IMG/VR virus record: IMGVR_UViG_3300025364_000003
Span: 62,001 to 126,000 of that record
Direction: 5' to 3' (one strand)
DNA length: 64,000 nucleotides
The notes beneath the pieces are model-generated. The model ran no database searches and was not told where the DNA came from. It worked only from the letters and a program-made list of their open reading frames with translations. Positions 18,106 through 35,023 of this stretch are shown here, piece by piece; positions within the stretch are counted from its first letter, which is position 1; each line of letters begins with the position of its first letter. Position numbers and translations under genes: made by a program.

Positions 18106-18804
18106 TCACTCTCCAATGGAGAAACGCAAGCGCAAGACCCTCTCTTCTCTCGGAGAAAGAGTGCGAAGCAACTGTTTTACGATATTGGCCTGAGACTCAG
18201 ACTCCAACTGCTCCTGGGCAGATGAAACCTCGGTATCTTCGATAAAATCGCCAAGAGAAGCATCCCCCTCTTCTCCAATGCTCATATCAAGCGACAGAGG
18301 ATTTTTGATATATTCAAAAATTCGTACGACCTTATCTTTCGGCAGCTCCAAGAAAGCGGAGAGTTCTTCTGGAGAAGGTTCGGAGCCGTTGACCTCCATC
18401 ATGAGCCGAATGGCCTTACGGAGTCGGCCAATGGTTTCCTGCATATGCACAGGAATACGAATGGTGCGAGCTTTATCTTGAAGGGCTCGACCAATCGCCT
18501 GACGAATCCAGTGGGTTGCGTAAGTAGAAAAACGGAATCCCTTGGTGTGATCGAACTTCTCTACTGCTCGCATGAGCCCGATGTTACCCTCCTGAATGAG
18601 GGCCATGAAGTCCATGCCTCGACCACGGTAGCGCTTTGCAATAGAAATAACCAGACGAAGATTCGACTCGACCATTTCGTTTCGAGCACGATCACCGTCT
18701 GGTCCACCTTTGAGTACCCGCTTGGCGAGCATAACCTCGCCCTCTCGGGTGAGAAGGTTGTCCTTCATTTTGTTGATATACACGCTTGTGGTAGTTTTGG
18801 TCAT
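18106..18804 (-). CDS. RpoD-derived sigma factor A, ending before region 4.2
   Basis: Regions 1.2 (LLTREGEV), 2 ([40 protein letters not shown]), 3 ([18 protein letters not shown]) and 4.1 ([13 protein letters not shown]), then IGE-stop. Confidence 0.92.
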
Positions 18805-18839
18805 TGTTCAACCCTACCACATTTTAGTGCATCTGTCAA
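18805..18839 (-). promoter_or_regulatory. Canonical sigma70 promoter for sigma A (TTGACA-17-TAGGGT, extended -10, leaderless)
   Basis: Exact TTGACA at 18839-18834, TG before the -10, ATG 6 nt after the -10. Confidence 0.8.
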
Positions 18840-18964
18840 TCGACTATAATTTATTGGCGGTTTAGTAAACCACCTTCGGCATCACAGTGTAACCATCTGG
18901 TGACAGTCGACGAACCCTTTCCTGTGAATTCTCATAACCTGGCATGGGCCTTGCTTCGATTGCA

Positions 18965-19150
18965 TCAGCCCCACCCCAGTTCACGGTCACGACGAATCAT
19001 CCGAGCGATATATTCCTCTTCCTTGGCAGTTCCTTGAAGCAAGCTCGGAAAGACAGGCTTGAGTCGCTGACTCAAGCACCGCTCGGTCGTAGTCTTCTCC
19101 AGAGTAGTCTGCCCGACTCGAAATTCGACCCGCTCGTTACCGTCAGCCAT
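18965..19150 (-). CDS. Small hypothetical protein
   Basis: 61-aa ORF overlapping the HNH stop, GGAGG SD. Confidence 0.6.
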   Translation of the reverse strand: MADGNERVEFRVGQTTLEKTTTERCLSQRLKPVFPSLLQGTAKEEEYIARMIRRDRELGWG

Positions 19151-19559
19151 TGTTGCCTCCCATTTCCTTCAATACTAGCATGAAGTCGTCCGGGAGTGAA
19201 CCGATTAGGATCATTTTCGAGACTTCTCGCTGTAGCTGAATCAGCCTCTCAGCCTCAGGAAGATTTTCGCCCTTCTTGCACAGCTCGATTGCTTGTCCAA
19301 TCGAAATCCTGGTCTCATGGAGGATCTTCCTCCGCAAAACCATATCGAGTTGAGCAGGCGTCGGGTTACTGTCGCCCTTCGTCTTGTTGCAAGGCAAACA
19401 AGAGATAACAAGGTTCCACGCCCGGTGAGGACCACCCTTGGACTTGGGGATCACGTGGTCCACCGTCTTGGAGTCCCAAGTCAGAGACTCCCCACAGTAG
19501 AAACAACGTCCCTTGTCTCGCTTCCAGAGCGTGCGCTTGACCTTTAGTGAGGCCGACAC
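19143..19559 (-). CDS. HNH endonuclease
   Basis: CFYCG...TVDHVIPKSKGG...NLVISCLPCNKTKG. Confidence 0.92.
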   Translation of the reverse strand: MSASLKVKRTLWKRDKGRCFYCGESLTWDSKTVDHVIPKSKGGPHRAWNLVISCLPCNKTKGDSNPTPAQLDMVLRRKILHETRISIGQAIELCKKGENLPEAERLIQLQREVSKMILIGSLPDDFMLVLKEMGGNNG

Positions 19560-19573
19560 TTTCTTTCCTCGGT

Positions 19574-19915
19574 TTAGCTGTTTGGATCGAAACCAGCGTG
19601 ATAGATGTGATAGATCACATCCTCCCGCTGAGGAACGCTCAGTACAGAGTCATTATCCCAATGGATATGCCCCTGACAATCCTGTGAATTGCTCTTCACT
19701 GCCTCGTACCACTCGTCATCGTCCATCTGGACCAGGGTCCCAGGAAGAGCCTCGATATTATCATAAAACGGCACGACAGAATCGAGACTCGACCACCAGG
19801 CTACTAGCTCAGACTCCGACATCCCGGTGTCCCACCGCCAGTAACGGTAACCGTATTCCTCCTCTAGCCAGACGATAACGGTGTTGTTCATGTTTTCCTC
19901 AGCAGTCACGGGCAA
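19574..19915 (-). CDS. Hypothetical protein (acidic, aromatic-rich)
   Basis: 113-aa ORF in the operon. Confidence 0.7.
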   Translation of the reverse strand: MPVTAEENMNNTVIVWLEEEYGYRYWRWDTGMSESELVAWWSSLDSVVPFYDNIEALPGTLVQMDDDEWYEAVKSNSQDCQGHIHWDNDSVLSVPQREDVIYHIYHAGFDPNS

Positions 19916-20174
19916 TTTTCATATCGATCTCGCCGATGAGATCGTGCATCTCTTCCAGCTCTTCCAGGGTACAGAACAGGTTAAACCCCGAGCGGTAACG
20001 GAGCTCCTGAAAACGGAGCGAGTGCTCCGTTTGGATACGAACCATTCGGAGCGGCTGTCCCTTATTGATCCCGGAGGTCATCGTGCCAACATGGCACACC
20101 GTCGAGGTGTTGCCGTAGTCGTACGACTCCGGAGCATCGGTAAAGCGGATGAAAACCTTGTCTTCGTTGTTCAT
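19899..20174 (-). CDS. Hypothetical protein (leaderless)
   Basis: GG-TTCATT-17-TATATT-6-ATG promoter. Confidence 0.75.
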   Translation of the reverse strand: MNNEDKVFIRFTDAPESYDYGNTSTVCHVGTMTSGINKGQPLRMVRIQTEHSLRFQELRYRSGFNLFCTLEELEEMHDLIGEIDMKIARDC

Positions 20175-20188
20175 GTTCTGAATATACC

Positions 20189-20362
20189 TTATTCGGAGTT
20201 AGAAATGAACCGAATATGAATTTTGTCGTAGGCTTTCTTGGCCTGCTTCAGGGTGGTGACAATTCCCTCCCTGGCTTGAGTGGCAACAATCACCCTGCTG
20301 AAGAGTTCCCGACGTTTGATCGGATCCTTGAGGATCTCACGGATATTGACTCGCTGCCTCAT
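20189..20362 (-). CDS. Small hypothetical protein
   Basis: ATGA overlap with the upstream stop at 20359-20361. Confidence 0.6.
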   Translation of the reverse strand: MRQRVNIREILKDPIKRRELFSRVIVATQAREGIVTTLKQAKKAYDKIHIRFISNSE

Positions 20363-20604
20363 CGGCCACCCTGACGAGCGGTCCATTCTGCCTCGAACGC
20401 TTCCTCGGCCCGTTCGCCCACGTCCACAGCTACATCCCAAACCCAATGACCTGGATCGTCGAGCCAGTGATCGCAATCGAAGTGCCAAGCGGCATTCTCT
20501 GCAAGGCGGGTACAGTTGACCTCACCACCCTGCCAAAGGTCCGGGTGACTATGGTCGGAAAGTTGTTCCCGCATGAATTGGCGGACTTGTGTCTTGACGA
20601 ACAT
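20359..20604 (-). CDS. Small acidic protein
   Basis: GEVNCTRLAENAAWHFD..WLDDPGHWVWDVA; AAGGAG SD. Confidence 0.7.
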   Translation of the reverse strand: MFVKTQVRQFMREQLSDHSHPDLWQGGEVNCTRLAENAAWHFDCDHWLDDPGHWVWDVAVDVGERAEEAFEAEWTARQGGR

Positions 20605-20616
20605 TATTGCTCTTTC

Positions 20617-20808
20617 TCAGTAAATCTTGACCCAGCCAGCCTTTAGAGCCGGCTGTAGCTGAACGCCGTTAACCGGATGACGGTGGCCCTCGTTGAGGAG
20701 CACGAAATAATTTCCCTCGTGGTCCTTGACCAGGGACTGATTAACGTCACTGCTAACGTGCTTACCGTTTCGGTAGTAATGAACCTCGACGTAACGTACG
20801 TGCTCCAT
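20617..20808 (-). CDS. Small hypothetical protein (leaderless)
   Basis: GG-TTCACA-17-TAATAT-7-ATG places the start at 20808. Confidence 0.65.
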   Translation of the reverse strand: MEHVRYVEVHYYRNGKHVSSDVNQSLVKDHEGNYFVLLNEGHRHPVNGVQLQPALKAGWVKIY

Positions 20809-20966
20809 GGTTCCCATATTAGTAAATAAGTCATCAGGTGTGAACCGAATATGGATTTTATCCATGAATCAGACCCATATAGAAAAATACTGTTGTCCCC
20901 ATTTGGTGACCGGCCTTTTTATTTAATTCGGTGCAAACTGAGGAAAGCCCGTGATAACTTAGAATC

Positions 20967-21482
20967 ACGGACGCACTTGTAGAAAAGGCTCGTCGATTCG
21001 CCCTGGAACATCATGGGGACCAGAGATATGGTGAACATCCGTACAGTCCCCATCTGGGGGAGGTGGCTGATTTGGCTCGGCCCTGGGGTCCGGTAGCGGA
21101 AGCGGTTGCCTGGCTTCACGATGTGGTCGAGGATACGGACGTGTCGAGCTACGACGTGTTCATGTCTTTCGGGGATCCTGTGGCGTCCTGTGTCTGGATC
21201 GTTACGGATCCAGGCGGTAGGAACCGCAAGGAAAAGAAGCTCCGACTTCACGAGAGACTCAAAGAAATCGTAGCCAACGATGCTAAGGGTTATGTTCAGT
21301 ACCGTCCAGCCCTCCTTGTCAAGGTCTGTGACCGCCTGGCTAACCTACGAGCAGGCAAGGCCGGCAATCCAGGGCTCCTGAAGATGTACCGTAAGGAGCA
21401 TACTGCGTTCAAGGATGCAGCATATGTGCCAGGTCTCTGCGATCGGCTTTGGAACGAAATCGAAGAAATCCTAGCCGATTAA
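20967..21482 (+). CDS. HD-domain small alarmone hydrolase-like protein (SpoT/Mesh1 type) with ACG at the start position
   Basis: KARRFALEHH..QRYG..PY..HL..V, LHDVVEDT, LLVKVCDRLAN; frame open from 20958 with ACG exactly 6 nt after the promoter -10. Confidence 0.85.
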   Translation, partial: TDALVEKARRFALEHHGDQRYGEHPYSPHLGEVADLARPWGPVAEAVAWLHDVVEDTDVSSYDVFMSFGDPVASCVWIVTDPGGRNRKEKKLRLHERLKEIVANDAKGYVQYRPALLVKVCDRLANLRAGKAGNPGLLKMYRKEHTAFKDAAYVPGLCDRLWNEIEEILAD

Positions 21483-21528
21483 CAGAAATAGGTTCAAACC
21501 TAGTCTAGGGCATGGTATATTCATAAGC

Positions 21529-22119
21529 ATGAAGGTACACGTCAACAGCTTCGTCAAGCGTCAGACCCCGGAGTCGGAGTTTTCTCATTTCGAGGGACCT
21601 CCAGGTTGTGAGGACGTCTGGGAAAACCTCCGTGTTTCGATCGAGCTAATGATCGAGCAGGATCATGGCATCGAACCCGGTTACCGGGATGGCGTGATTC
21701 TCGTTCACGTGAACCCCCAGCATTTCTTTTCTGGCGTGGTTCAGCTCAAGGAGGGTGACCACCTTGTGGGAGAGTTCAAGGCCCGTCGACCCGGCGAGTC
21801 TCCTCGGAAGTCGATCGGCGTGGTTGGTGCAGAAAAGATGCCCGCCAAGACCGCTTTCGTGGTTCTCTACGCTTCCACCGTGCTTGCGGAGGGTGGAGAT
21901 AACGAGCTTCCGGCCGAGGAAGGGAATTGGGAGATCATTTCCTTGAATGCCAGTCCGGTCGAGGGTGAAATGCCCATCAGTCCGATGGTGCTTCTTCACA
22001 ACCACTTCGGTAGCGACGGTGGCACCAGTACCAACCTAAGCGATTCTGAGCTGGTCGCCATGCTCCGTGAGTCTTTCGAGTTCTGGAAGGACAAGGCAAT
22101 GGTAGCCCCGAAGGGTTGA
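21529..22119 (+). CDS. DUF3228-like protein (leaderless)
   Basis: F..RQ, GYRDG, VVLY, WEIISLNA, E.P..P...HN.FG..GG, FEFW..KA pattern. Confidence 0.65.
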   Translation: MKVHVNSFVKRQTPESEFSHFEGPPGCEDVWENLRVSIELMIEQDHGIEPGYRDGVILVHVNPQHFFSGVVQLKEGDHLVGEFKARRPGESPRKSIGVVGAEKMPAKTAFVVLYASTVLAEGGDNELPAEEGNWEIISLNASPVEGEMPISPMVLLHNHFGSDGGTSTNLSDSELVAMLRESFEFWKDKAMVAPKG

Positions 22120-22337
22120 ACATGTCCCAAAAAAGCCCCGAATATCGAAATGGATACGGAGACGCAAAAGCTGATCTCCTACGGCTAGTCAAGGAGGCTC
22201 TCAAGAGCCTCCATGAGGCTTGCCAAAATAATGGCTTCTGCGACCCCTCCGAAAAAGATAAGGAGCTTCTGAGGCTCCGTGAGGCCGAGCTACGCCGCAT
22301 TAGGGGCATGATCAAGGCATTAAAGCCAAAAGAGTGA
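22116..22337 (+). CDS. Small helical protein
   Basis: TTGA overlap; EYRNGY motif. Confidence 0.65.
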   Translation: MNMSQKSPEYRNGYGDAKADLLRLVKEALKSLHEACQNNGFCDPSEKDKELLRLREAELRRIRGMIKALKPKE

Positions 22338-22379
22338 ATTCTCTTTACCTGGGAAACCGGAAAAGGTAAGTTGTAGCAC

Positions 22380-23153
22380 ATGAGTATCCCGAATCGTCCG
22401 TTTGGTGTCGAACTTGAGTTCAACAGTGCACCTCCACCGGAAGTGCTGGCGTGGCTTCTCAGAGATAAGGGCATCAAGGCTCATGATGACGCCGTTGCCC
22501 GTGATCATTCGTTTTGGCTCGTGCATGATGATGCCTCTATCACTGGACCTGGGGTGCATATTGAGGTTTCTTCCCCGATCCTCCGAGGAAAGAAAGGTTT
22601 GGCCGAGGTTCGTTCAGTCTGTCGTTTTCTCACCAAGTTGGGCTGTAAGACGAATTCGTCTTGTGGGCTTCATGTCCACGTGAGTGATAGCAGAATCACC
22701 AATTCGACTCTGATAAACATTCTCAAGCGCTATGCAGAAAATGAAGAATTGATCGACTCTTGGATGACAAAGAGTCGTCGTGGAAACCGAAACCCATTTT
22801 GTCGTTCTCACAAGAGGGACTGGAAAGATATGGTTGCATGTCTTTCCGACAAGGAAGAGAATCTTAGATTGCGTTTTGGTGAACGTTTTGAGGTTTCTTC
22901 TACTGTTGGTGGTGATAAGATCAACTTCGATTCCAATTACGCCACCCTGGAATTCCGTCACCATCATGGGACACTCAACTCCACAGAAGTCTCCAATTGG
23001 GTACAATTCTGCCTAAACTTCGTGGAGGTTTCTGCCGATCTCACCCCTGGAACCCGACGAGCAACCAAGCGCACCAGGGACACTGGACCTCTGATGGGTT
23101 TGTCCACAAATATTCGGAATCATTTCACTTACCAGGCCGAGCGTCTTCGCTAA
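22380..23153 (+). CDS. Putative amidoligase (Amidoligase_2 family)
   Basis: FGVELE, D.SI, EVSSPIL, NSSCGLHVHV, TLEFRHHHGTLN motifs. Confidence 0.88.
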   Translation: MSIPNRPFGVELEFNSAPPPEVLAWLLRDKGIKAHDDAVARDHSFWLVHDDASITGPGVHIEVSSPILRGKKGLAEVRSVCRFLTKLGCKTNSSCGLHVHVSDSRITNSTLINILKRYAENEELIDSWMTKSRRGNRNPFCRSHKRDWKDMVACLSDKEENLRLRFGERFEVSSTVGGDKINFDSNYATLEFRHHHGTLNSTEVSNWVQFCLNFVEVSADLTPGTRRATKRTRDTGPLMGLSTNIRNHFTYQAERLR

Positions 23154-23206
23154 CGAATAACAGTTATTTGGTGTAAATCTTAGAACGTCTATAATAGGAT
23201 AATAAC

Positions 23207-23452
23207 ATGCTCATCAAGCTCAAAGACCGCAACGGAACCATCCCGGACTTCGATCGCCAGCTCGGGGAGGCTCGATACTGTCTGCCGGACATGGAAATGT
23301 ATCACCGAGCCTGTCTCGTCCTGTACGACACCGAGGCCAACAAGTTCACCCTGTTCACCCGTGATCTGGTCACTTCGGAGTACATGGTGACTCAGGTGGA
23401 GGGAACCCGTCGGGGCTTGCAGTACAAAAAGTTCTGGGAAAAAGCTTCGTAA
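23207..23452 (+). CDS. Small hypothetical protein (leaderless)
   Basis: GG-TGTAAA-17-TAGGAT-6-ATG. Confidence 0.7.
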   Translation: MLIKLKDRNGTIPDFDRQLGEARYCLPDMEMYHRACLVLYDTEANKFTLFTRDLVTSEYMVTQVEGTRRGLQYKKFWEKAS

Positions 23453-23491
23453 TAGGTTCACAACCAGGCTTTGGCCTGATATATTAAGACC

Positions 23492-23656
23492 ATGGCCAAG
23501 CGAAACAAGAAGAACGTCTCGGACGTGAAGCGACGCAGTGCCGCTGCCGTGGCCGCTATCCTCAAGACTGGTGCTGGTAAGCACGGGGACCGTCGCTTGA
23601 AGCGGATGAAGACCCGTGCGGCCCAGAAGCGGGCTGCCTTCCGAGACTGGAGGTGA
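23492..23656 (+). CDS. Very basic 54-aa protein (MAKRNKK...GAGKHGDRRLKR...)
   Basis: Below the ORF-track cutoff; leaderless GG-TTCACA-17-TATATT-6-ATG promoter; stop overlaps the next start. Confidence 0.75.
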   Translation: MAKRNKKNVSDVKRRSAAAVAAILKTGAGKHGDRRLKRMKTRAAQKRAAFRDWR

Positions 23657-23853
23657 GCATTACTGAACGGGAAGAAGAAGCCTTCAAGAAGGGCTACGAG
23701 CGCTGTCGGCTGGATATGGCCCGAGAGCTGGGTCAACTCATTGCGTATTACTACAACAAAGGTCAGACCAATGGTGGTGATGCGCTCCGTCATGCTAGCA
23801 CCGTGCTGCGAGCTGTGAAGCCTGGACAGAAGCCTTGGAATCCAGATATTTGA
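23653..23853 (+). CDS. Small helical protein
   Basis: GTGA overlap; FKKGYE motif. Confidence 0.65.
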   Translation: MSITEREEEAFKKGYERCRLDMARELGQLIAYYYNKGQTNGGDALRHASTVLRAVKPGQKPWNPDI

Positions 23854-23879
23854 ACCGATTAATAATCGGTTCAAATATC
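23845..23879. repeat. Perfect 16-bp inverted repeat containing back-to-back GGTTCAAA elements
   Basis: GATATTTGAACCGATT-AAT-AATCGGTTCAAATATC. Confidence 0.9.
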
Positions 23880-23907
23880 GAGAAATTCGGGATAAGCTAA
23901 ATTTAAG

Positions 23908-24243
23908 ATGACCAAGCCCACCTTGATATTCTACACCACGTTCAAGAACGTTCCTTATTCCGATGAGGAGTGGGAGCGTGCCAATAAGTGGCGTGCCAAA
24001 TTGGCCCAGGACAATCCGACCTGGGCTGAGAAGCACCCCGAAGACGTAGAGCCGCTGAAAACCCGTCCCGTTCATTCGTTCAGATATGGTCACGCATGTT
24101 TCTCTCACGAGGAAGCCCGTAAGGTCTGTGAGCAAGCCTTGGAAAGTGGTGTCCAGATGGTGACCTACTCAGCTTGGGACAGTAATAAGCAGGTAGGGGA
24201 GTGGTCTAGGCGTCAGGGTGGACATTGGTACCAGAGTAAATAA
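23908..24243 (+). CDS. Hypothetical protein
   Basis: 111-aa ORF downstream of the promoter at 23870. Confidence 0.75.
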   Translation: MTKPTLIFYTTFKNVPYSDEEWERANKWRAKLAQDNPTWAEKHPEDVEPLKTRPVHSFRYGHACFSHEEARKVCEQALESGVQMVTYSAWDSNKQVGEWSRRQGGHWYQSK

Positions 24244-24508
24244 TACTAGTATTTGGGTTCACATTCATCTTTACAAGCGCACCACCAAGCGCATTCAGAA
24301 CTTGAATTCTGAGCTTCGCAGGCTTCGTGCCAAGGCTAAGGCTATGAAGCCGGGTCTTGACGACATCCATGCCTTGGAGGAGATGTATCCCGAAGAAAAG
24401 GCTATCATTTGGGGGCGTACCGAATACATCTGAGGTATCAAATATGCAGTTAGCCGAATTTTCTTGAAATAGGTTCAGAATCCAACAAATATAGGACATA
24501 TTAAGAAC

Positions 24509-24772
24509 ATGAGTAACCGACGTAAGCGTAAGCAGGCCCGTAAGCAGGCTCGCCGTGAGGAGCGTAAGACTCGTTTGGTCGAGCTGGAGTCCCGTCGCCT
24601 CCAGGAGGAGGATGCTGGGCTGGAGATGAGCACTGAGCGTGTCTCCCCGGTTCTGGTGGACGAGTGGGATGACTTCGACCCGGAGTACGAGGAGCGCATC
24701 CGCAAGGACCGTGCCATCAAGGATCGTCGTGCCCGTAAGCAGGAGCTTCTCAACGAGGCTCTGAGCCGCTGA
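24509..24772 (+). CDS. Highly charged small protein (paralog 1)
   Basis: Leaderless promoter; C-terminus EWDD..EERIRKDR..RKQELLNEAL. Confidence 0.75.
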   Translation: MSNRRKRKQARKQARREERKTRLVELESRRLQEEDAGLEMSTERVSPVLVDEWDDFDPEYEERIRKDRAIKDRRARKQELLNEALSR

Positions 24773-24822
24773 AAAAACCTAAAAAGGTTTAAAACCCCAC
24801 CCTAATAAGGTATATTCTAATC

Positions 24823-25140
24823 ATGGCAGACAACAGGACCCGTAAGCTCGACCGCAAGGCCATCAAGCGTCTCCAGAAGGCCATTCAGCGTCTCGATCGT
24901 CAGATCGAGCGGGAGATCGAAACGCACCCTGACGGAGCCGAGTCCCCGTTCCTCTTCGACTTGAACGACGTGAGGTGGGTTCTGGAGCTACAGCTACAGC
25001 GACTCGACCAGCAGATGGACCCTCCGGGCGAGTGGGACGATCGGGACGAGTCCCGTGAGGACCGAATCCGGGAGGACCGCAGCCGTAAGGCTTGTCGTGC
25101 GGACAAGCAGTTTTTGTTCGATGAGGCCCTGGGTCTTTAA
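24823..25140 (+). CDS. Highly charged small protein (paralog 2)
   Basis: Leaderless promoter; C-terminus EWDD..EDRIREDR..DKQFLFDEAL. Confidence 0.75.
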   Translation: MADNRTRKLDRKAIKRLQKAIQRLDRQIEREIETHPDGAESPFLFDLNDVRWVLELQLQRLDQQMDPPGEWDDRDESREDRIREDRSRKACRADKQFLFDEALGL

Positions 25141-25157
25141 AAGAAAAGAAGGTAAAA

Positions 25158-25442
25158 ATGGACGCTCTAGACAAGATCAAGGCCATGAGGGGTGACGCTA
25201 AACTTTCTCCCAAGGTTGCCATGTGTTTGGCACGGGAAATGCACGATTTGCCGGATGACCGACTCAAGGAAGCCTGGCGAGAGCTTACCGTGAGCAAGGC
25301 CCTTGAAGGGAGTGAGCTTTTGCTCACTCTGCATCCTTACATCGAGGTACTGATGGTGAATTTGGCCTCGGGTCTTCCTCGCCCGACCTGGGAAGAGACA
25401 CTGTCAGGCAAGGATCCTGCGGCTGGGCAGACCGTGGAGTGA
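25158..25442 (+). CDS. Stand-alone homolog of the MoxR C-terminal domain
   Basis: MHDLP..AW..LHPYIEVLMV..ASG matches MHDCP..AW..VHPYIEKLMV..ASG in 2557..3876. Confidence 0.75.
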   Translation: MDALDKIKAMRGDAKLSPKVAMCLAREMHDLPDDRLKEAWRELTVSKALEGSELLLTLHPYIEVLMVNLASGLPRPTWEETLSGKDPAAGQTVE

Positions 25443-26815: not shown

Positions 26816-26872
26816 CCCGAAAAAAAGAAAAAGGCGGTTCAGAAAATAACCGCCCCATGCTATAACAAGAAC

Positions 26873-27878: not shown

Positions 27879-27907
27879 CACCAGCCAAGGTCTTAGCATT
27901 GGCCGTA

Positions 27908-27946
27908 GCCCCCTTCTCCCTGACCGGAGAAGGGGGTTTTTCTTTT
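27908..27946 (+). terminator. Intrinsic terminator
   Basis: GCCCCCTTCTCC/GGAGAAGGGGGT stem followed by TTTTCTTTT. Confidence 0.85.
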
Positions 27947-27987
27947 ATTCGGTACAAACCCAGTCTCGGATATGAGATATTAGAACC

Positions 27988-28560
27988 ATGACGAACGACA
28001 CGCAGAAGACGACGACCATTTCCCCTGACCCCGAGCCTCAGAATCTCACGACTCGGCTCATGTTTGAGGATAGTTGCAAGACTGTCCCCTGGCCTGCTCT
28101 GAGTCAGAGTCTTTCTGGGCTCCTTGAAAGGGACTTCATTCGGTTGGACGAGAAGTTGCATGCGAAGGGCTGGGATCTCCTGGGCGAGGGACGACATCGA
28201 ACCGGCTATTTTCACAAGAACGCCAATGGCGTTCTTAAGGTTTCCAGCAATGTTGCTGGCGTGAAAGCAAACCTGACCGAGCTGCACTATTCCAAGCTAG
28301 GCACCAAGATTTCTGTGACCTTGCCCTGGGCCGACTACAGGGTAGTAACCCTTCCCATTCCTCGGGTGCTGGGTCATCGACGAGTGGGACTGTTGTCGGT
28401 TCTTTGCGTCGAGCGAGTGCAACGAGTCTCGTACAGGGCTGCTAAAAATTTGGCCCAGAACCATCCTTGGATTGACGACGTGGATGAAGATGAAGATGGT
28501 CCCCAGGTTGGGTACACCAACGATGGACGGCTGGTCTGCTTTGACTGGTGTAACTTTTAG
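27988..28560 (+). CDS. Protein kinase-like fold protein (atypical)
   Basis: Gly loop LGEGRHR, VLKV, N..E, terminal GRLVCFDW; catalytic loop atypical. Confidence 0.5.
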   Translation: MTNDTQKTTTISPDPEPQNLTTRLMFEDSCKTVPWPALSQSLSGLLERDFIRLDEKLHAKGWDLLGEGRHRTGYFHKNANGVLKVSSNVAGVKANLTELHYSKLGTKISVTLPWADYRVVTLPIPRVLGHRRVGLLSVLCVERVQRVSYRAAKNLAQNHPWIDDVDEDEDGPQVGYTNDGRLVCFDWCNF

Positions 28561-28605
28561 AATATTCGGTTCACTAGGCTAGCGGATTTTGGTATATTAA
28601 AGACT

Positions 28606-29796
28606 ATGACGACGTTGGTACAGAAGTTCCTCCGTGAGCGCTCGCTGGCCGAGCTTGAGGCCGAGCACGGTGTCAAGGCTCGTGTGGCCGGGCACAAGTT
28701 CTCGCTCAACTACGATCAGATCGAGGCAAAGGACAGCGATCCGCTGGCACAGGAGTGCCGTGGCTTGATCCTGACGCCCGTTCAGGGTTCGATCGTGACG
28801 GAGGCTCCGCTTGGAGAGACCCGAATTCTGGCCCGTCCGTTCAACCGTTTCTTTAATCTGGGCCAGGAGGCTGCTGCCCCGGTCGACCTCGATCACCCGG
28901 AGACTTGTTTCTACGAGAAGATGGATGGAACGTTGACGATCCTCTACTTCGACGATGTTGTGGAGAAGTGGCATGTTGCCACCCGTGGGGTGCCGGAGGC
29001 CGATCTCCCGATCGATGGTTTCGGGCAGTACACCTTTCGGACGCTTTTCGAGCACGCCTGCCGTGATACCACTGGTCGTGACTTCAAGGATTTCGTTCGT
29101 TACTTGGATGTGCAGAGCACGTACATCTTCGAGCTGACGACGCCGATGAACCGTATCGTGGTTGATTATCAGGATTACAAGATCACCCTGTTGGGTGCTC
29201 GTGCCCGAGAGACCGGGGTGGAGTTTGATCCGGTGGACCTGGCACCGGTGCTTGAGGTGCCTCACGCTCCGGTGTACCGATTCGGCTCGTTGCAGGCAAT
29301 GGTGGATTTTGTGTCATCCCGTAACCCCCAGGACCACGAGGGCATCGTGGTTTGTGACCCCTCGTATCGTCGAATCAAGGTCAAGAACGCTGGCTATCTT
29401 GCCTTGAACAAGGTTCGGGACAGTGTGCTCAGTTCGCCCCGTGGGCTCGTGGAGTTGCTTCTTTTGGAGAAGCTCGACGATGCTCTGCCTCTGTTTCCTG
29501 ACCACGTTGTGGAGTGAGCTGAGAAGCTCCGAGATGCCTTCCGTGTACTGGTTCAGGATTTCCGCAAGGATTACCTAATCTGCCAAGAGGAGGCCGATCG
29601 GGGTTCCCCGGATGCACACCGCAAGTCTTTCGCTCTGGCGGTGCAGGCTCGGAAGCTTTGGATGGCTCCAATGATGGACGTGTACCAGGGCAAGGCTGAC
29701 GATCTTGTGAGCTGGATCAAGAGCCGGCGCCAGGTCGACGGTGGTTGGCCTAACAGCTTCTTGGATCAGGTTCTCCGGCAGCTAGAAAGCAAGTGA
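28606..29796 (+). pseudogene. T4 Rnl1-like RNA ligase interrupted by an in-frame TGA at 29515-29517
   Basis: ECRGL, FNRFFN, motif I YEKMDG, FEL, EGIVV, KVKN..Y; frame stays open 92 codons after the TGA to TGA 29794-29796. Confidence 0.8.
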
Positions 29797-29847
29797 ATAA
29801 GGTATAATGGGGTTCAAATCCGGGCCCCATTATTTTATAATAAAACC

Positions 29848-30021
29848 ATGATGAACCTGGATACGTCCAATATGGCTGACAGTCTCCAAAAGGATGTCCA
29901 GGCATTGCAGGGCCAAATTGAGGACGCCAGGCGGAACGTCGCCCGAGCCCAAGGGTGGGAAGAAGGCTACAGGGAAGGGCTGCGACAGGCTCTAGAACTG
30001 ATCAATATCACCTTGCGATAA
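29848..30021 (+). CDS. Small coiled-coil protein (57 aa, leaderless)
   Basis: GG-TTCAAA-17-TATAAT-6-ATG; WEEGYREG motif. Confidence 0.7.
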   Translation: MMNLDTSNMADSLQKDVQALQGQIEDARRNVARAQGWEEGYREGLRQALELINITLR

Positions 30022-30096
30022 ATCCAGAAAATCCCATAAAGGGTTTAAATCTCTCGTCGATTATCGTATATTCAAGAGTGTTGGGAGATCACGAGA

Positions 30097-30275
30097 TGGA
30101 AGCGAAGTCTGGCATGGTCGTTTACGCCGTCCACGTGTACATGGACTACGAGTACAACGACGTGATTTCGATCCACCTCACGGCCGAGGGTGCCGAAGCA
30201 AAGCGGGCCAAGGTTCAGAAGGACGAGCCGTGGCACCACGGGGTCTATGTCCGGGAGCGAAAGGTGGAACTGTGA
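30097..30275 (+). CDS. Small beta-beta-alpha family protein
   Basis: VYAVHV...VISIHLTAEGA; GGAGA SD. Confidence 0.6.
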
Positions 30276-30520
30276 AATACGTTCGACGAAAGTTCTTCCG
30301 GGAGTACCGTAAATACGGCCTTCCCTTCATGGCCGCCCAGCGGCTTGCCAGGCTTCGTGCCATTGGCGGTTTTGCCTGCGAGCTTCAGGCAGAACTCCAC
30401 AAGGAGGGTTTCGTGGTCGAAGTCTTGACCTTCTGTGACTGCTGCGGTCCCGAGGTCGTTCGCCTGCTCAAGGACGAAAAGACGTGGGATCTTCACTACT
30501 TCAGCCTCGCCCCCTGTTGA
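30272..30520 (+). CDS. Small protein with CDCC motif
   Basis: GTGA overlap with the upstream gene. Confidence 0.6.
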   Translation: MKYVRRKFFREYRKYGLPFMAAQRLARLRAIGGFACELQAELHKEGFVVEVLTFCDCCGPEVVRLLKDEKTWDLHYFSLAPC

Positions 30521-30578
30521 GCGAAAAAAAGTTCGCTATTAGGTTCAGAACCAAGGGCGAATAAGCTATATTCTAATC

Positions 30579-31469
30579 ATGGGCCGAGGGACGGCCCGAC
30601 CGGGAGTCAGGCCGGCGCAACCCAAGCACCTGACAGAAAGCAAAAAAATGGCCATTCGTTTTCGTCACATCAAGGTCAGCTCCACCATTTCTTACGAGCA
30701 GCGCCGTGAGATCGAGGAGCAGACGGGATCCAAGATCGGTTACCCCCGAATCCACCTGAGCAACCTCGACGACGAGGTCAAGCTCTCAATGAGCACCGGT
30801 CGGAACGAGTGCCTCGGGCTCTACTACATCGAAGAGGATGAGACGAGCCATGAGGGCCACGTGGTCGGGATCGAAGTCGATTACAACGTCCGCATCATGA
30901 GCGACGTTTGGGCCGATATCACCTATGCGGTGGTCTACGAGCCTACCCGTGAGCACACTGGCTGTCACTCCACCACGGTGGTGGATTACGCCACCATGGA
31001 AAAGGGACCGAAGGGGCCTTGTGGGATGTTCCGGCGTATCCAGATCGCCAACTCGGAATTTTCCGAGGCGATCAGCGAGATCACCCGTGCCGAGGTGGAC
31101 GCCGATCCGTGGCTTTTGGAGGTCTACGAGACGTGGAAGGCTGCCCAGAAGTACGCCAAGGCGCTTCAGAGCTACAACCGAAGCCAGGAGGACATTCAGC
31201 GCCACCGGCGGGCCGTCGAGCGTGACAAGTGGGTCCGTGTGACCCGTGGTCGCAAGGTCGCCCAGGGGACCGAGGGGATCGTGTTCTGGATCGGCGAGTC
31301 CCAGTATGGGGACAAGGTCGGAATCGCCCTCCCCAGGGAGGGTGGCACCTTCCGCAAGGAAAAGAAGACCGGACGTTACGGCAAGGTTTACGAGAGCTAC
31401 GCCGACGTGGCCTGGACCTACGCAAGGAACGTGGACGTGATCTCCGGCCCTGGTGGTCGGGTCCTCTGA
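30579..31469 (+). CDS. Hypothetical protein with C-terminal KOW/SH3-like segment (start 30579 or 30648)
   Basis: Own promoter; VRVTRGRKVAQGTEGIVFWIG...VGI. Confidence 0.8.
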   Translation: MGRGTARPGVRPAQPKHLTESKKMAIRFRHIKVSSTISYEQRREIEEQTGSKIGYPRIHLSNLDDEVKLSMSTGRNECLGLYYIEEDETSHEGHVVGIEVDYNVRIMSDVWADITYAVVYEPTREHTGCHSTTVVDYATMEKGPKGPCGMFRRIQIANSEFSEAISEITRAEVDADPWLLEVYETWKAAQKYAKALQSYNRSQEDIQRHRRAVERDKWVRVTRGRKVAQGTEGIVFWIGESQYGDKVGIALPREGGTFRKEKKTGRYGKVYESYADVAWTYARNVDVISGPGGRVL

Positions 31470-31475
31470 GAGGGG

Positions 31476-31501
31476 AAGGGGCCTCCGGGCCCCTTTTTTA
31501 T
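31476..31501 (+). terminator. Intrinsic terminator
   Basis: AAGGGGCC-TCCG-GGCCCCTT followed by TTTT. Confidence 0.85.
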
Positions 31502-31715
31502 TCCTATTCGGTTCACATTTTGTCTACCGTGGGCTATTCTAGTACCATGCTGAACAAGGAACCGAGGGCTGAGGATGTTCTAAAGCGAGTTTTGGCTCGT
31601 ATCGAGAAGAACACTCCCAAGTACCATCATCACCGAGATGTGAGTCGGACCTTGGATTCGATCTAGCAGATCCTACTTACGGAGCTTCGTTCTCTACAGA
31701 ATCGAGACTGATACC

Positions 31716-31946
31716 ATGTACAAGCCCCTGTCCTACCCTTCCCGTTTTGGGATGCACTGCACCTCTTGTGGGTCCCTCGTGGAAGCCTGCGAGCTTGCCA
31801 ATGGCTCCTTGGAGCAGTGTAAGGAGGATGCCAGCTTTCATATCGAAGAGTCGATCCGAAACGGGGACATAGACCATCCCATTCTAGGGACTGCCCATGA
31901 GATGCTCTGCGACACCATCCTGAGAGCCCGTTCACGGGCCCTGTAG
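31716..31946 (+). CDS. Small Cys/His protein
   Basis: HCTSCG...C...H. Confidence 0.6.
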   Translation: MYKPLSYPSRFGMHCTSCGSLVEACELANGSLEQCKEDASFHIEESIRNGDIDHPILGTAHEMLCDTILRARSRAL

Positions 31947-32035
31947 CCTCCTGGGAGGGCCAAAGTTTTTTCCCATAAGGGTTTAGACCTGGCCCTAAAT
32001 CTGTTATTCTAAAAACAATCGAGGGAGCACAAAAG

Positions 32036-32752
32036 ATGGATACCACGACTCAGGACCGAATCGCTCGCATGAAGGCTCGGAACGCCAAGCACAACCCGTG
32101 GGATCGCTGGTCCCCGTCGGAGCGTTCGATGTCGCTCCAGACCATGGGTGGTGCTCGTCCGATCAAGTGGACCACCGACGTCACCAAGGCGGGACAGGTC
32201 ACCGAGGACGGTTTCGTGTGGGCCTTCGCTGGTGGTCCGGTGGAGGGTACGCCGCAGGCTTCGGTCAAGAAGCGTGCCGATGGCAAGGTCGACGGTCGCT
32301 CCAAGGGTGTCCGCAAGTGCGGCAAGTGCGGGGAGTCCGGCCACAACGCTCGCACCTGTGGTCGCCAGCGCAAGTCGATCGCCAGCCTTCCGGCAAGCCT
32401 TCGCAAGCCGGTGGGCGAGTCCGAGCCGGCCAAGGGGCCAGAGTCTAAGCCGGTGCCGGACCAGATTTCGGCGGCAATGGGTCTTCCGGTGATCGAGCGT
32501 CCGACGAAGAGCACGCCCTCCGGCAAGGCTCCCAAGCCCCGCACCATGGCGGACCGTGAGTCGGCTCGTGGCGAGTCTCGGGCGAGCAGGAAGGGTTCTC
32601 GGAAGTGCGGCAAGTGTGGTCAGTCAGGTCACAACGCTCGGACCTGTAGCAAGGGTGGTGCCAAGCCCAAGGTCAAGCACTCTCGGGCTCGCCAGAACAC
32701 CTGTGGTCGCTGCGGTGGCAAGGGTCACAACGCTCGGACCTGTAATAAGTGA
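32036..32752 (+). CDS. Basic protein with three CCHC zinc knuckles
   Basis: CGKCGESGHNARTC, CGKCGQSGHNARTC and CGRCGGKGHNARTC (CX2CX4HX4C). Confidence 0.9.
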   Translation: MDTTTQDRIARMKARNAKHNPWDRWSPSERSMSLQTMGGARPIKWTTDVTKAGQVTEDGFVWAFAGGPVEGTPQASVKKRADGKVDGRSKGVRKCGKCGESGHNARTCGRQRKSIASLPASLRKPVGESEPAKGPESKPVPDQISAAMGLPVIERPTKSTPSGKAPKPRTMADRESARGESRASRKGSRKCGKCGQSGHNARTCSKGGAKPKVKHSRARQNTCGRCGGKGHNARTCNK

Positions 32753-32815
32753 AGGAATATCTGAATAACCGAAAATCGGTTCATAATCCCACCCTAGACT
32801 GGTATTCTTTAAACC

Positions 32816-33016
32816 ATGGACAAGCCGCTCACGAAGAACGACCAGATCAACATCTACCCCCTGATCGAGGACGGTGTCACCTACGGCTGGGCTGCCGAAA
32901 TCATGCTCTATCCCGGCGAAGAGTGTTCCTACCAGGACCGGGAGTGGCTCCGACTCGGCTACTTCTCCGACAAGGCCACCGCCCGCAAGCGGGCGCTTGA
33001 AGCAGTCAATGATTGA
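32816..33016 (+). CDS. Small protein (LGYFSDKATA motif, leaderless)
   Basis: GG-TTCATA-17-TATTCT-7-ATG. Confidence 0.75.
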   Translation: MDKPLTKNDQINIYPLIEDGVTYGWAAEIMLYPGEECSYQDREWLRLGYFSDKATARKRALEAVND

Positions 33017-33070
33017 CAGTGGAAGGGGAAACAAAAGGAAGAGCACAAAGAATTCAGCTCGTGTTATCAC

Positions 33071-33268
33071 GTGTGGTACGGCATCTGCCCCCATGAGGGC
33101 TGGGACATGCGCTGGTACTTCGTCCAGACCTATCAAACCGATGGGAATGCTATTGGCCGAGCCAGGAAGCTAGAAAAGGAAAGCAAGGCTGTCAGGGTCG
33201 TCCAGCACTGGTGGGATGGGAAGTCCTTCCAAGTCGAGGTAATTTACGAGAAAATGGGCAATACCTGA
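33071..33268 (+). CDS. Small hypothetical protein
   Basis: 65-aa ORF; start uncertain. Confidence 0.5.
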   Translation: MWYGICPHEGWDMRWYFVQTYQTDGNAIGRARKLEKESKAVRVVQHWWDGKSFQVEVIYEKMGNT

Positions 33269-33359
33269 ACATCCTAACAGGATAAGGAAAATAGGCGGCT
33301 AACCACATTTTTTCGATAATCGGTTCATAAAAGAGGTCTACTAGGGTATTCTCTTAACC

Positions 33360-33881
33360 ATGGACAACACGCACCACGGTGCCCCCAAGGGCACGCACAA
33401 GCTCTCCACCGCCGCCGTTCTCCCCTTCCTCCTCGCCGGTCGCTCGCTGGTGACCGTCCTGAATCGCACCACCGATGGTCACTACACCTACCGGATCCAG
33501 GCCCCCGGCAAGACCGCCAAGGAGCGCCGAAACGCCTCCATCCTCTTCGTGTCCGTTCTCACTGGACCGGACAACGGCGAGCGTGGCTCGTACACCTACA
33601 TCGGAATCCTCATCCGTCAGACCGGGGAGTTCAAGCTCACGGCGAAGAGTCGCCTTCCCAAGAGCAGCGCTTCTGTTGCCGGCTTCGACTGGCTCTGCCG
33701 TCAGGCTCGCCGGGAGAACCTCGACAGCTTCCCGCACGTGGAAGTCCGCCACCACAACGAGTGTGGCGCCTGCGCCCGAACCCTCACGGTCCCCGAGTCG
33801 ATCGACACCGGCCTCGGTCCAATCTGCGCCAAGCGCCTCGGCGCCCATTGGGCCAGGAACGACCAGCGCAAGGTCGCTTGA
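33360..33881 (+). CDS. DUF6011-domain protein (leaderless)
   Basis: C-terminal CGACARTLTVPESIDTGLGPICA; N-terminal TYRI..FVSVLTGPDN. Confidence 0.85.
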   Translation: MDNTHHGAPKGTHKLSTAAVLPFLLAGRSLVTVLNRTTDGHYTYRIQAPGKTAKERRNASILFVSVLTGPDNGERGSYTYIGILIRQTGEFKLTAKSRLPKSSASVAGFDWLCRQARRENLDSFPHVEVRHHNECGACARTLTVPESIDTGLGPICAKRLGAHWARNDQRKVA

Positions 33882-33975
33882 CCCAACATGGGGACCCCTA
33901 AGGGGTCCCCGCCCTTCAGGGCTTTTCTTTTGCTAATCGGTTCAAAAGGCAGTCCGGATCGGATATATTAGAACC

Positions 33976-34209
33976 ATGAGCACAACGACCTATCCCGCCG
34001 CCGAGTCCGCCGCCAAGGCCATGCAGCTTCCGGTCACCGTCTGCAAGGTGACCCGTAAGTTGTACAACAGGACGGTGCCTGCCCTCAACGAGGAGCTGGC
34101 CGCCTCCCTGATCGCTTCCGCCGGGTTCCCTTGCGGAACCCCGGCCCACGAGGCCGCCATGGGTGTCCTTCGGGCTCGGTTCGAGTCCTACCTTTACAAC
34201 AGTTTCTAA
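33976..34209 (+). CDS. Small hypothetical protein (leaderless)
   Basis: GG-TTCAAA-17-TATATT-6-ATG; flanked by GGGGACCCC/GGGGTCCCC hairpins. Confidence 0.75.
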   Translation: MSTTTYPAAESAAKAMQLPVTVCKVTRKLYNRTVPALNEELAASLIASAGFPCGTPAHEAAMGVLRARFESYLYNSF

Positions 34210-34303
34210 GGCCCAGGGGGTCCCCAAACGGGGACCCCAACCTTTCTCGAAAAAAATTGTCTAATAGGTTCATAAAAGGGTCCAGCTAGGGTAATATCAA
34301 AAT

Positions 34304-35023
34304 ATGCCGATGACGAAGACCGCTACCGACGCCTACCTCGCTCTCCTCACCGCTGACCTCCTCACCCGTGAGGATGAGGTCGCCCTCGCTGCCATCGCCC
34401 AGGACACCGAACACCCCGAGTCCGAGAAGGCTCGTCAGGCCATGATCGAGGCCAACCTCCGGCTGGTGGTCCACGTGGCGAAGAAGTACCGTGGCCGTGC
34501 TTCCAAGCTCGGCGTGTCTTACATCGATCTCATTCAAGAGGGTAACATCGGTCTCATGACCGCTGTCGAGAAGTTCGATGGTGACCGTGGGCACCGCTTC
34601 TCCACCTATGCCGTTCACTGGATCCGTCAGTCCATCGGTCGTGCCCTCCAGAACAAGGCGAGCACGATCCGGGTCCCGGTTCACGTCCACGAGGTCGTGG
34701 GCAAGCTCAAGTCCGCCGCTCGGCTCATCGGTGAGATGAACGGTGAGGGTCCGACCCCGGCTGAGGTCGCTTCCTTTCTGGAGCTTCCCGAGGACAAGGT
34801 TACTCGCCTGTGGCAGTACGTCCGCCCCTGCGATTCCCTCGATCGTCAGGTGGGTTCCGAGGATGGTGACTCCGTGCTCGGTGACTTCGTGGAGGACACC
34901 GGCAACAGCCTGACCGATGCGGTCGACGATGCCGCTTCCAAGTCGCTCGTGCACACCGTGCTCCGCACCCTGACTCCCCGTGAGGAAAAGGTGCTCAAGC
35001 TCCGGTTCGCCGTCGGCGCCTGA
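34304..35023 (+). CDS. RpoD-derived sigma factor B, ending before region 4.2
   Basis: [71 protein letters not shown] then AVGA-TGA-TAG; GG-TTCATA-17-TAATAT-6-ATG promoter. Confidence 0.92.

What the first reader, a model, noticed from the sequence alone, without database searches (positions are those of the whole stretch)
18106..35023. Two RpoD-derived sigma factors both cut at the same point, just before the -35-reading region 4.2
Seen: sigma A (18106..18804, -) ends [17 protein letters not shown]-stop and sigma B (34304..35023, +) ends [17 protein letters not shown]-stop-stop followed directly by a terminator. Known: in primary sigmas this helix continues into the 4.2 HTH (…HTLEEVG…TRERIRQIE) that binds TTGACA. 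The two copies differ strongly in sequence and GC content yet stop at the same residue, which argues for a selected architecture rather than decay. Inference: this is either a -35-blind sigma needing a partner in trans (T4 gp55 plus gp33 is the precedent, but those are not full group-1-like sigmas) or a dominant-negative core-RNAP sequestering factor. The RF.IGE ending and ELP.DKV segment resemble deltaproteobacterial/myxococcal RpoD as I recall it, which hints at the host.
Basis: partly seen in the sequence, partly recalled or inferred. Interest (0 to 1): 0.9.

Follow-up and report, generated by a model that had tools for sequence, protein, structure and literature searches.

The report
Phage sigma factors lacking region 4.2
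A roughly 461-kb T4-like phage carries two intact RpoD-like sigma factor genes that belong to a conserved, metagenome-only phage family whose members all end just before the part that reads the -35 promoter element, and the phage's own promoters are of the "extended -10" type that such a sigma could use.

Summary
Sigma A (18106..18804, -) and sigma B (34304..35023, +) have sigma-70 regions 1.2, 2, 3 and the region 4.1 hairpin. Both stop at position 17 of 50 of Pfam Sigma70_r4.

This is not decay. At least 27 metagenomic phage proteins (42-77% identical) end within a few residues of the same point. On a tree they form one side of a single branch, and the retained 4.1 helix is as conserved as region 2. 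A and B are paralogs that inherited the cut, so the shared stop is not convergence. No region 4.2 is encoded in any frame of the window.

The surrounding early-gene region holds 21 promoters built as AAT(C/A)GGTTCA, 19 nt, TAnnnT, against 0.6 expected. Most have G at -14, often TG. In most, the ATG sits 6-7 nt downstream, which implies leaderless mRNAs.

Best reading, inferred: these are working, -35-independent sigmas that use extended -10 promoters. The upstream box would be read in trans, possibly by a co-occurring phage-only tandem-HTH protein (8215..8748 and 27402..27878). That partnership is circumstantial only.

The suggested myxococcal host is not supported. I rate this a new variant of a known kind.

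The parts
18106..18804 (-). Sigma A, 232 aa. RpoD-like sigma with region 1.2 (weak match), 2, 3.0-3.2 and the 4.1 helical hairpin. It ends with TGA where region 4.2 would begin.
   Evidence: ORF. Pfam r2 4.9e-22, r3 3.6e-20, r4 positions 1-17/50 only. AF2 model: sigma2 at 20-113, sigma3 at 119-166, disordered 168-195, helices 196-215 and 218-228, then the end.
18811..18839 (-). Sigma A's own promoter-like site: TTGACA, 17 nt, TAGGGT with TG at -15/-14. The ATG (18804) lies 6 nt after the -10 hexamer, so the mRNA would be leaderless.
   Evidence: Read from the sequence. A-type sigma genes in L005 (10043) and L006 (9966) also carry the rare TTGA variant of the box.
17937..17957 (-). Hairpin about 150 nt downstream of the sigma A stop, followed on the - strand by a T-rich run. 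Probable terminator, which would make sigma A monocistronic.
   Evidence: The scan flagged the hairpin on the + strand. The - strand reading is mine, from the sequence.
34304..35023 (+). Sigma B, 239 aa. Paralog of sigma A (53% identity) with two small insertions in region 2. It ends at the same point with TGA, followed by TAG.
   Evidence: The B-type subclade (P0019, P0020) has the same insertions and the same end.
34263..34297 (+). Sigma B promoter of the box class: AATAGGTTCA, 19 nt, TAATAT, G at -14, ATG 6 nt downstream.
35043..35064 (+). Intrinsic terminator directly after the double stop of sigma B.
   Evidence: 9-bp stem, 6 GC pairs, T-run.
6577..35082 (.). Region holding the box promoters, AAT(C/A)GGTTCA-19 nt-TAnnnT. 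Their strand matches the direction of the genes.
   Evidence: 25 box matches vs 5.8 expected. 21 full sites vs 0.57 expected, G at -14 in 18 of 21, ATG 6-7 nt after the -10 hexamer in 14 of 21.
8215..8748 (+). Tandem-HTH protein 1, 177 aa, with an acidic C-terminal tail. Candidate reader of the upstream box in trans (inferred).
   Evidence: Pfam HTH_7 plus weak sigma-4-like hits. Phage-only family of 36 proteins found on the same contigs as the truncated sigmas. hhalign places it collinear with RpoD regions 3.1 to 4.2, E 7.6e-4 but probability only 25%. AF2 pLDDT 82.7.
27402..27878 (+). Tandem-HTH protein 2, 158 aa, paralog of protein 1 (53% identity). It lies behind a box promoter and an A/C-rich leader of about 80 nt.

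Best explanation
Shown: the two genes are intact members of a conserved, phage-borne branch of the sigma-70 family that lost region 4.2 once and has kept that form. They retain the region 2.1-2.2 surface that binds core RNA polymerase. They retain the region 2.3-2.4 residues that melt and read the -10 element, and the region 3.0 His/Glu pair that reads the TG of an extended -10. They also retain a strongly conserved 4.1 helical hairpin.

Inferred: each forms a holoenzyme with host core RNA polymerase that cannot read a -35 element. That holoenzyme would fire only at extended -10 promoters, which this phage and its relatives carry in large numbers: (T)GnTAnnnT placed exactly 19 nt downstream of a phage-specific AAT(C/A)GGTTCA box.

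Inferred, weaker: the box spans about -41 to -32 and is more conserved than an ordinary -35. It would be read by a separate factor that occupies the space region 4.2 normally fills. The leading candidate is the phage-only tandem-HTH protein, which has two paralogs here. The sigma A gene sits behind a canonical TTGACA promoter, while sigma B and most neighbouring genes sit behind the TTCA box. This suggests a cascade: host sigma, then sigma A, then box promoters including sigma B.
For: Family-wide end point. One origin on the tree, SH-aLRT 99 and 94. The 4.1 helix has about 0.9 per-column identity, as high as region 2. Region 2 and 3 motifs (QEGNxGL, FSTYA.(W/H)WIRQ, IPVH(M)xE) are invariant or nearly so. 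No region 4.2 in any of six frames of the window. Both genes have their own promoter, and a double stop with a terminator (B) or a terminator-like hairpin about 150 nt downstream (A). Promoter class: 21 sites vs 0.57 expected. G at -14 in 49 of 53 sites and TG in 37 of 53, summed over the window, L005, L006 and L007, against about 6% expected for TG. The TTGA variant lies upstream of A-type sigma genes in three phages. HTH family: restricted to these phages, on the same contigs, directly upstream of the sigma gene in L007, and weakly sigma-3/4-like. From established knowledge (Kumar et al. 1993, Barne et al. 1997, cited from memory): E. coli sigma-70 lacking region 4.2 still initiates at extended -10 promoters.
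Against: There is no biochemical evidence at all. Host primary sigma could also use these extended -10 promoters, so the promoters do not prove that the phage sigmas act on them. The sigma-HTH link rests on co-occurrence, one adjacency and sub-threshold similarity. hhalign gives 25% probability, the best Foldseek E-value is 0.1, and distant relatives of the HTH profile are generic multi-HTH proteins. The fourth truncated subclade (L084, L088, L089) shows neither the box nor the HTH gene in the DNA fetched, and sits next to virion genes. The partnership therefore cannot be obligatory for the whole family. Only 64 kb of the 461-kb genome could be read, so a separate sigma-4-like or gp33-like protein elsewhere is not excluded.
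Confidence: 0.5

Rival explanations
1. Decoy sigma. The truncated protein's main job is to occupy host core RNA polymerase and shut down -35-dependent host transcription, without itself directing productive phage transcription.
For: Core-binding region 2.1-2.2 is intact and region 4.2 is absent. A holoenzyme of this kind would be blind to most host promoters. The genes sit in an early-type region of small genes.
Against: A decoy needs only the core-binding surface. Yet the -10-melting residues, the region 3.0 residues, the 3.2 linker and the 4.1 hairpin are all kept over divergence down to about 42% identity. Matching extended -10 promoters are abundant on the phage. Two otherwise invariant DNA-contact positions changed in a clade-specific way, W to H and T to G, which looks like retuned specificity rather than lost DNA reading. 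Host shut-off could still be a side effect of the main explanation.
Confidence: 0.15
2. Two-piece sigma whose second piece is not the tandem-HTH protein. A gp33-like flap-binding co-activator, or another sigma-4-like protein encoded outside the window, would fill the empty region 4.2 position, as gp33 does for gp55 in T4.
For: The phage is T4-like: it has a gp20-type portal. Group 2 jumbo phages are reported to carry gp33 orthologs together with sigma factors (PMC7824862). Without region 4.2 the beta-flap would be left free for such a factor. The fourth subclade has truncated sigmas without a visible HTH gene.
Against: No such gene was identified here. Only 64 kb of 461 kb was readable. gp33 does not read DNA, so it would not explain the conserved 10-bp box.
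Confidence: 0.2
3. The box promoters are ordinary early promoters read entirely by host primary sigma, with TTCAnA as a weak -35. The truncated sigmas would act on a different, unidentified promoter set, for example middle or late genes.
For: TTCAnA lies 17 nt from the -10 hexamer, which is the canonical -35 slot. Both sigma genes and both HTH genes are themselves behind such promoters, so some recognition that does not need phage proteins must start the cycle. In the fourth subclade the sigma gene sits at the head of structural genes.
Against: C replaces the most important G of TTGACA. The conserved bases extend 6 nt upstream of the -35 slot. They are nearly invariant across phages whose sigmas are only about 50-65% identical. 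No alternative repeated promoter motif was seen in the 36-64 kb late-type region.
Confidence: 0.15

Closest known systems
Cellular primary (group 1) and group 2 sigma-70 factors (RpoD/SigA), and the RpoD-like sigmas of cultured jumbo phages and cyanophages
   Same: Regions 1.2, 2, 3 and 4.1 are clearly homologous, at 50-58% identity to bacterial RpoD. The core-binding motifs and the -10 and extended -10 reading motifs are kept.
   Different: There is no region 4.2, no region 1.1 and no non-conserved insert. All cultured-phage RpoD-like sigmas I checked continue 38-98 residues past the cut: Vibrio phage 2.275.O, KBS-S-2A, S-CBS1 and MaAM05.
Laboratory E. coli sigma-70 truncations lacking region 4.2 (Kumar et al. 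1993, from memory)
   Same: Same architecture, with the same predicted property: -35-independent initiation at TGnTATAAT promoters.
   Different: Those are engineered constructs. Here the form is natural, conserved and duplicated, and it comes with a matching promoter set.
T4 AsiA (with MotA) and Thermus phage P23-45 gp39
   Same: Functional analogy. These phage proteins disable or move host sigma region 4, so RNA polymerase ignores -35 promoters and uses phage promoters that have extended -10 elements or a separate activator box. T4 review: PMC2988021. gp39: PMC3950348.
   Different: Those systems remodel the host sigma after it is made. Here the phage supplies its own sigma already lacking 4.2. 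No homology to AsiA, MotA or gp39 was found or claimed.
Two-subunit (split) sigma factors: T4 gp55/gp33, SPO1 gp33/gp34, B. subtilis SigO-RsoA, Tn916 Sig7-Sig8
   Same: Precedent for sigma functions being divided between two proteins (bioRxiv 10.64898/2026.10.01.756105). In L007 the HTH gene lies directly upstream of the truncated sigma gene.
   Different: In those systems the pieces are minimal, region 2-like and region 4-like. Here one piece is nearly a whole RpoD (1.2 to 4.1), and the proposed second piece is a tandem HTH whose relation to sigma regions 3-4 is unproven. No physical association has been tested.

Membership tests
Sigma-70 family (Pfam Sigma70_r2/r3/r4) | Region 2 (core binding, -10 recognition and melting) | tested here: met
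   PF04542 matched over its full length: 4.9e-22 for A, 1.2e-17 for B. Invariant motifs are listed.
Sigma-70 family (Pfam Sigma70_r2/r3/r4) | Region 3 (3.0 extended -10 contact, 3.1 HTH) | tested here: met
   PF04539 at 3.6e-20 for A and 6.6e-12 for B. The IPVH.xE motif is conserved.
Sigma-70 family (Pfam Sigma70_r2/r3/r4) | Region 4 with the 4.2 helix-turn-helix that reads -35 | tested here: not met
   Only profile positions 1-17 of 50 are matched, below the Pfam cut-off. My own region 4.2 HMM finds nothing in any frame of the window, best E 0.44.
Group 1 primary sigma (RpoD/SigA) | Region 1.1 and full length of about 360-620 aa including 4.2 | tested here: not met
   No PF03979 or PF04546 hit, and lengths are 232 and 239 aa. 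Full-length relatives carry these domains.
T4 gp55/gp33-type late sigma system | A minimal region-2-only sigma plus a flap-binding co-activator and dependence on the sliding clamp | tested here: not met
   Sigma A and B have regions 1.2 to 4.1, so they are not the minimal gp55 type. I did not look for a gp33-like partner or for clamp dependence.
Two-subunit sigma (SigO-RsoA / Sig7-Sig8 type) | Second protein supplying the region 4-like DNA-binding function, encoded with the first | tested here: inconclusive
   The tandem-HTH family is found on the same contigs and is adjacent to the sigma gene in L007. One member passes the Pfam Sigma70_r4 cut-off, 25.1 vs 24.1 bits. hhalign gives only 25% probability and Foldseek finds nothing significant.
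Two-subunit sigma (SigO-RsoA / Sig7-Sig8 type) | [quoted passage not shown] | not testable with these tools
   This needs pull-down and in vitro transcription experiments.

The most novel reading that the evidence does not exclude
A natural two-piece primary-type sigma. In this reading a phage lineage removed region 4.2 from an RpoD-like sigma and passed upstream-element reading to a separate tandem-HTH subunit. That subunit would dock where region 4.2 sits, on the beta-flap and the retained 4.1 hairpin, and would read a 10-bp AATCGGTTCA box at about -41 to -32. The two sigma paralogs and two HTH paralogs would give combinatorial promoter classes that drive leaderless early genes.
Probability: 0.3. 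Interest if true: 0.85.

Novelty: new variant of a known kind. Interest (0 to 1): 0.72.

Why it matters
Region 4.2 is treated as a defining part of sigma-70-type factors, and its removal has been studied only with engineered truncations. This family is a naturally selected, diversified set of primary-type sigmas without it, together with the promoter set it would need. That combination offers three things. It is a ready test case for how much of promoter recognition can be moved off sigma. It suggests a way for phages to take over host RNA polymerase without an anti-sigma such as AsiA or gp39. It may also provide compact, orthogonal sigma/promoter parts. The leaderless promoter layout adds information about gene expression in uncultured huge phages.

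Tried and rejected
1. Read-through or recoding of the stop. In-frame sequence after sigma A's TGA does not resemble region 4.2, and sigma B has TGA-TAG followed by a terminator. Rejected.

2. Split gene with region 4.2 nearby. HMMs built from 66 full-length relatives found nothing in six-frame ORFs of the window. The first HMM was built from only 2 sequences because of a regex error, and I redid it. The HNH gene lies upstream of sigma A, not downstream.

3. Small proteins downstream of the sigma genes as the missing piece. L005 and L006 share a small conserved protein there, but it is not HTH-like and is absent from the window.

4. Pseudogene or assembly error. Rejected because of independent assemblies and family-wide conservation.

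5. Descent of the tandem-HTH protein from sigma regions 3-4. The PDB sequence search (KorA 0.01, SigA 0.3), Foldseek (best E 0.1) and a profile search of 1.8 billion representative proteins returned only generic multi-HTH proteins. Not provable.

6. Mapping the promoter class across the whole 461-kb genome, and in IMG/VR, by pattern scans. Perfect-consensus hits in the genome all fall inside the window. Uninformative.

7. Host inference from sigma similarity. The best cellular hits are Bacillota at 58% identity or less, and the search is biased by its word patterns. No usable host signal.

8. Literature. I found no description of phage RpoD-like sigmas lacking region 4.2.
Full report
**What is in the window**

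The window is part of a huge phage. The sigma A protein occurs on 23 contigs from independent assemblies. Three of these are about 461 kb long: JGI 3300005974 and two ENA assemblies. One paper cites sample 3300005974 in a study of a hypersaline phototrophic mat (PMC5812542). The window also carries a T4-type portal gene interrupted by an intein, a GroEL-type chaperonin, four tRNA genes and long runs of small genes with no known function. No cultured phage matches it at the DNA level.

**Checking the observation**

- Pfam matches Sigma70_r2 and Sigma70_r3 over their full length in both proteins. Sigma70_r4 matches only at profile positions 1-17 of 50 in both.
- The two proteins are 53% identical.
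- Sigma B ends with TGA-TAG and an intrinsic terminator. Sigma A ends with TGA, and a hairpin with a T-rich tail lies about 150 nt downstream.
- HMMs built from region 4 or region 4.2 of 66 full-length relatives find nothing else in any of the six frames of the window.
- The in-frame sequence after sigma A's stop does not resemble region 4.2.

**Is the truncation selected?**

A search of 5.8 billion proteins with sigma A found about two dozen metagenomic proteins of 221-237 aa that have r2 and r3 but lack r4. Some appear longer, but only because of N-terminal extensions. At least one extension is a mis-called start, since a promoter lies inside it.

In alignment A1 every one of these proteins stops 1-5 residues after the ...LRxRF motif of the 4.1 helix. 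Full-length RpoDs continue from that point into ...TLEEVG..TRERIRQIE.

Three further members (L084, L088, L089; 42-45% identical) from other myovirus contigs end ...R(M/I)KFG(L/I)SD-stop at the same place.

I built maximum-likelihood trees with the columns C-terminal to the cut removed. In these trees the truncated proteins form one side of a single branch. SH-aLRT support is 99 for 24 truncated sequences and 94 for 27. The trait needs only one change. Sigma B, with P0019 and P0020, nests inside the A-type clade. The identical end points of A and B are therefore inherited from a truncated ancestor and are not two independent events.

- The open reading frame and its motifs have survived divergence down to about 42% identity.
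- The retained 4.1 helix (residues 213-228) has about 0.9 per-column identity, as high as region 2.
- The AF2 model shows sigma2, sigma3, a disordered 3.2 linker and a final two-helix hairpin.

**What the protein can still do**

The following motifs are invariant or nearly so:

- the core-binding motif of region 2.2 (LIQEGNxGL);
- the melting and -10-reading motif (FSTYA.(W/H)WIRQ);
- the region 3.0 motif (IPVH.xE).

My assignment of these motifs to core binding, -10 recognition and TG recognition rests on established sigma-70 structure-function work, recalled from memory.

Two positions that are invariant in the 96 full-length relatives are changed in most A- and B-type members: W to H at residue 98 and T to G at residue 105. 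This suggests retuned reading around position -12 rather than decay.

**The matching promoters**

A 10-mer, AATCGGTTCA, occurs 25 times with up to one mismatch, against 5.8 expected. Nearly all copies lie between 6.5 and 35 kb, and their strand follows the direction of the genes.

The full layout is AAT(C/A)GGTTCA, then exactly 19 nt, then TAnnnT.

- There are 21 such sites in the window, against 0.57 in shuffled sequence.
- G is at -14 in 18 of the 21 sites, and TG is at -15/-14 in 10.
- An ATG lies 6-7 nt after the -10 hexamer in 14 of the 21, so most of these mRNAs would be leaderless.

The same layout is found in relatives. In L007 all 11 sites read TGnTATA(A/C)T, 10 of them TGnTATAAT. In L005 all 14 sites have TG.

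These are textbook extended -10 promoters, the class that does not need region 4.2. The box covers about -41 to -32. It therefore overlaps only the upstream part of the normal -35 slot, where it reads TTCAnn with C in place of the key G of TTGACA.

Sigma B and the gene after it are driven by box promoters at 34263 and 35073. Sigma A has its own TTGACA-17-TGgTAGGGT promoter (18839..18811). The A-type sigma genes of L005 and L006 likewise carry the rare TTGA variant of the box. In the window there are 4 TTGA-type sites against 21 TTCA-type sites. This pattern suggests that host sigma starts the cycle at sigma A. The suggestion rests on only three cases.

**A candidate partner**

Two paralogous proteins (8215..8748, 177 aa; 27402..27878, 158 aa; 53% identical) each contain two three-helix HTH domains. 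The longer one also has an acidic tail.

Their family is small, 36 proteins. None of its members carries any source annotation beyond a generic "predicted transcriptional regulator", and the two window paralogs match no PHROG family convincingly. Members occur on the same contigs as truncated sigmas: the 461-kb, 48.6-kb and 67.5-kb contigs. In L007 a short member lies directly upstream of the truncated sigma gene.

The evidence that they resemble sigma regions 3-4 is weak:

- hhalign aligns them collinearly with RpoD region 3.1, the 4.1 helix and region 4.2 (SLATEFGLSRDRIRKF against TLEEVGQQFSVTRERIRQIE). E is 7.6e-4 but probability is only 25%.
- One member just passes the Pfam Sigma70_r4 cut-off.
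- PDB sequence hits are weak: KorA at 0.01 and SigA region 4.2 at 0.3.
- Foldseek finds nothing significant with a confident model.
- A profile search of 1.8 billion representative proteins recovers only generic multi-HTH proteins beyond the core family.

I therefore treat the partnership as an inference. The fourth truncated subclade has neither the box nor an HTH gene in the DNA fetched, and it sits beside virion genes. The truncated sigma is thus the more general feature, and the box/HTH system is at most an addition in one phage group.

**Comparison with known systems**

The RpoD-like sigmas of the cultured phages I checked all keep region 4. A comparative survey of jumbo phages describes "minimal" and "RpoD-like" phage sigmas without mentioning loss of region 4.2 (PMC7824862). 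My literature searches found no description of this family.

Functionally, the nearest parallels are these:

- engineered sigma-70 lacking region 4.2;
- phage factors that disable host region 4, namely T4 AsiA with MotA and P23-45 gp39 (PMC2988021, PMC3950348);
- two-subunit sigmas.

The host hint is not supported. The nearest cellular RpoDs are Bacillota at 58% identity or less, and none of them is truncated.

**Verdict**

The most likely function is a -35-independent phage sigma that works on extended -10 promoters, with upstream recognition handed to another factor. Everything beyond the sequence-level facts is untested.

Noticed in passing
window 6577-35082; also L005, L006, L007: In most box promoters the ATG lies 6-7 nt after the -10 hexamer (14 of 21 in the window). 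These early genes, including sigma A and sigma B, would therefore be translated from leaderless mRNAs.
   Followed up: partly
window 2198-6573, 19704-20129, 35355-35368: A second over-represented motif, (ATAT)TCGT(A/G)CGACTC, occurs 13 times against 0.5 expected. It is partly palindromic (GTCGTACGAC), sometimes appears as tandem copies 15-16 nt apart, and its ACGACTC core recalls T7-type promoters. Its function is unknown.
   Followed up: partly
window 35370-35480: A stretch rich in G and C homopolymer runs, including G8C8, lies exactly where base composition drops from about 60% to about 40% GC. It is also the boundary between the early-type and structural-type gene regions.
   Followed up: no
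window 8130-8214 and 27326-27401; L005 5650-5733; L009; L010: Unlike their leaderless neighbours, the tandem-HTH genes have leaders of about 80 nt that are rich in A and C (repeated aaccaa). This holds even in distant relatives and suggests special translational control.
   Followed up: partly
window 8215-8748, 27402-27878, 34304-35023 vs 18106-18804: Third-position GC is very uneven: HTH1 86%, HTH2 87%, sigma B 78%, sigma A 52%. The 36-64 kb half of the window is only 34-45% GC overall.
   Followed up: no
window 50972-54199: The T4-type portal (gp20) gene carries an intein with an HNH endonuclease domain in its N-terminal part.
   Followed up: no
L084 473-1165, L088 9953-10642, L089 6422-7114: A fourth subclade of truncated sigmas (230 aa, ending ...KFG(L/I)SD) occurs in other myovirus contigs. 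The gene lies immediately upstream of virion structural and tail-sheath genes. These proteins keep the RpoD-type W and T in region 2.3-2.4.
   Followed up: partly
L005 10766-10963, L006 10691-10981: A small conserved protein (…Y.VWR…N…G.PTG.IPANKR…) directly follows the A-type sigma gene in two relatives. It is missing downstream of sigma A in the window.
   Followed up: no
window 7070-9926; L234, L235, L005, L009: Conserved gene neighbourhood around HTH1: a KaiC/RecA-like ATPase is transcribed divergently from it, and a protein of about 336 aa with no known family lies downstream.
   Followed up: no
L005 10001-10762 (P0014), P0011, P0012: The longer family members (253-299 aa) probably have mis-called starts. 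In L005 a box promoter lies inside the annotated N-terminal extension, and the real start is MNKTT.
   Followed up: partly
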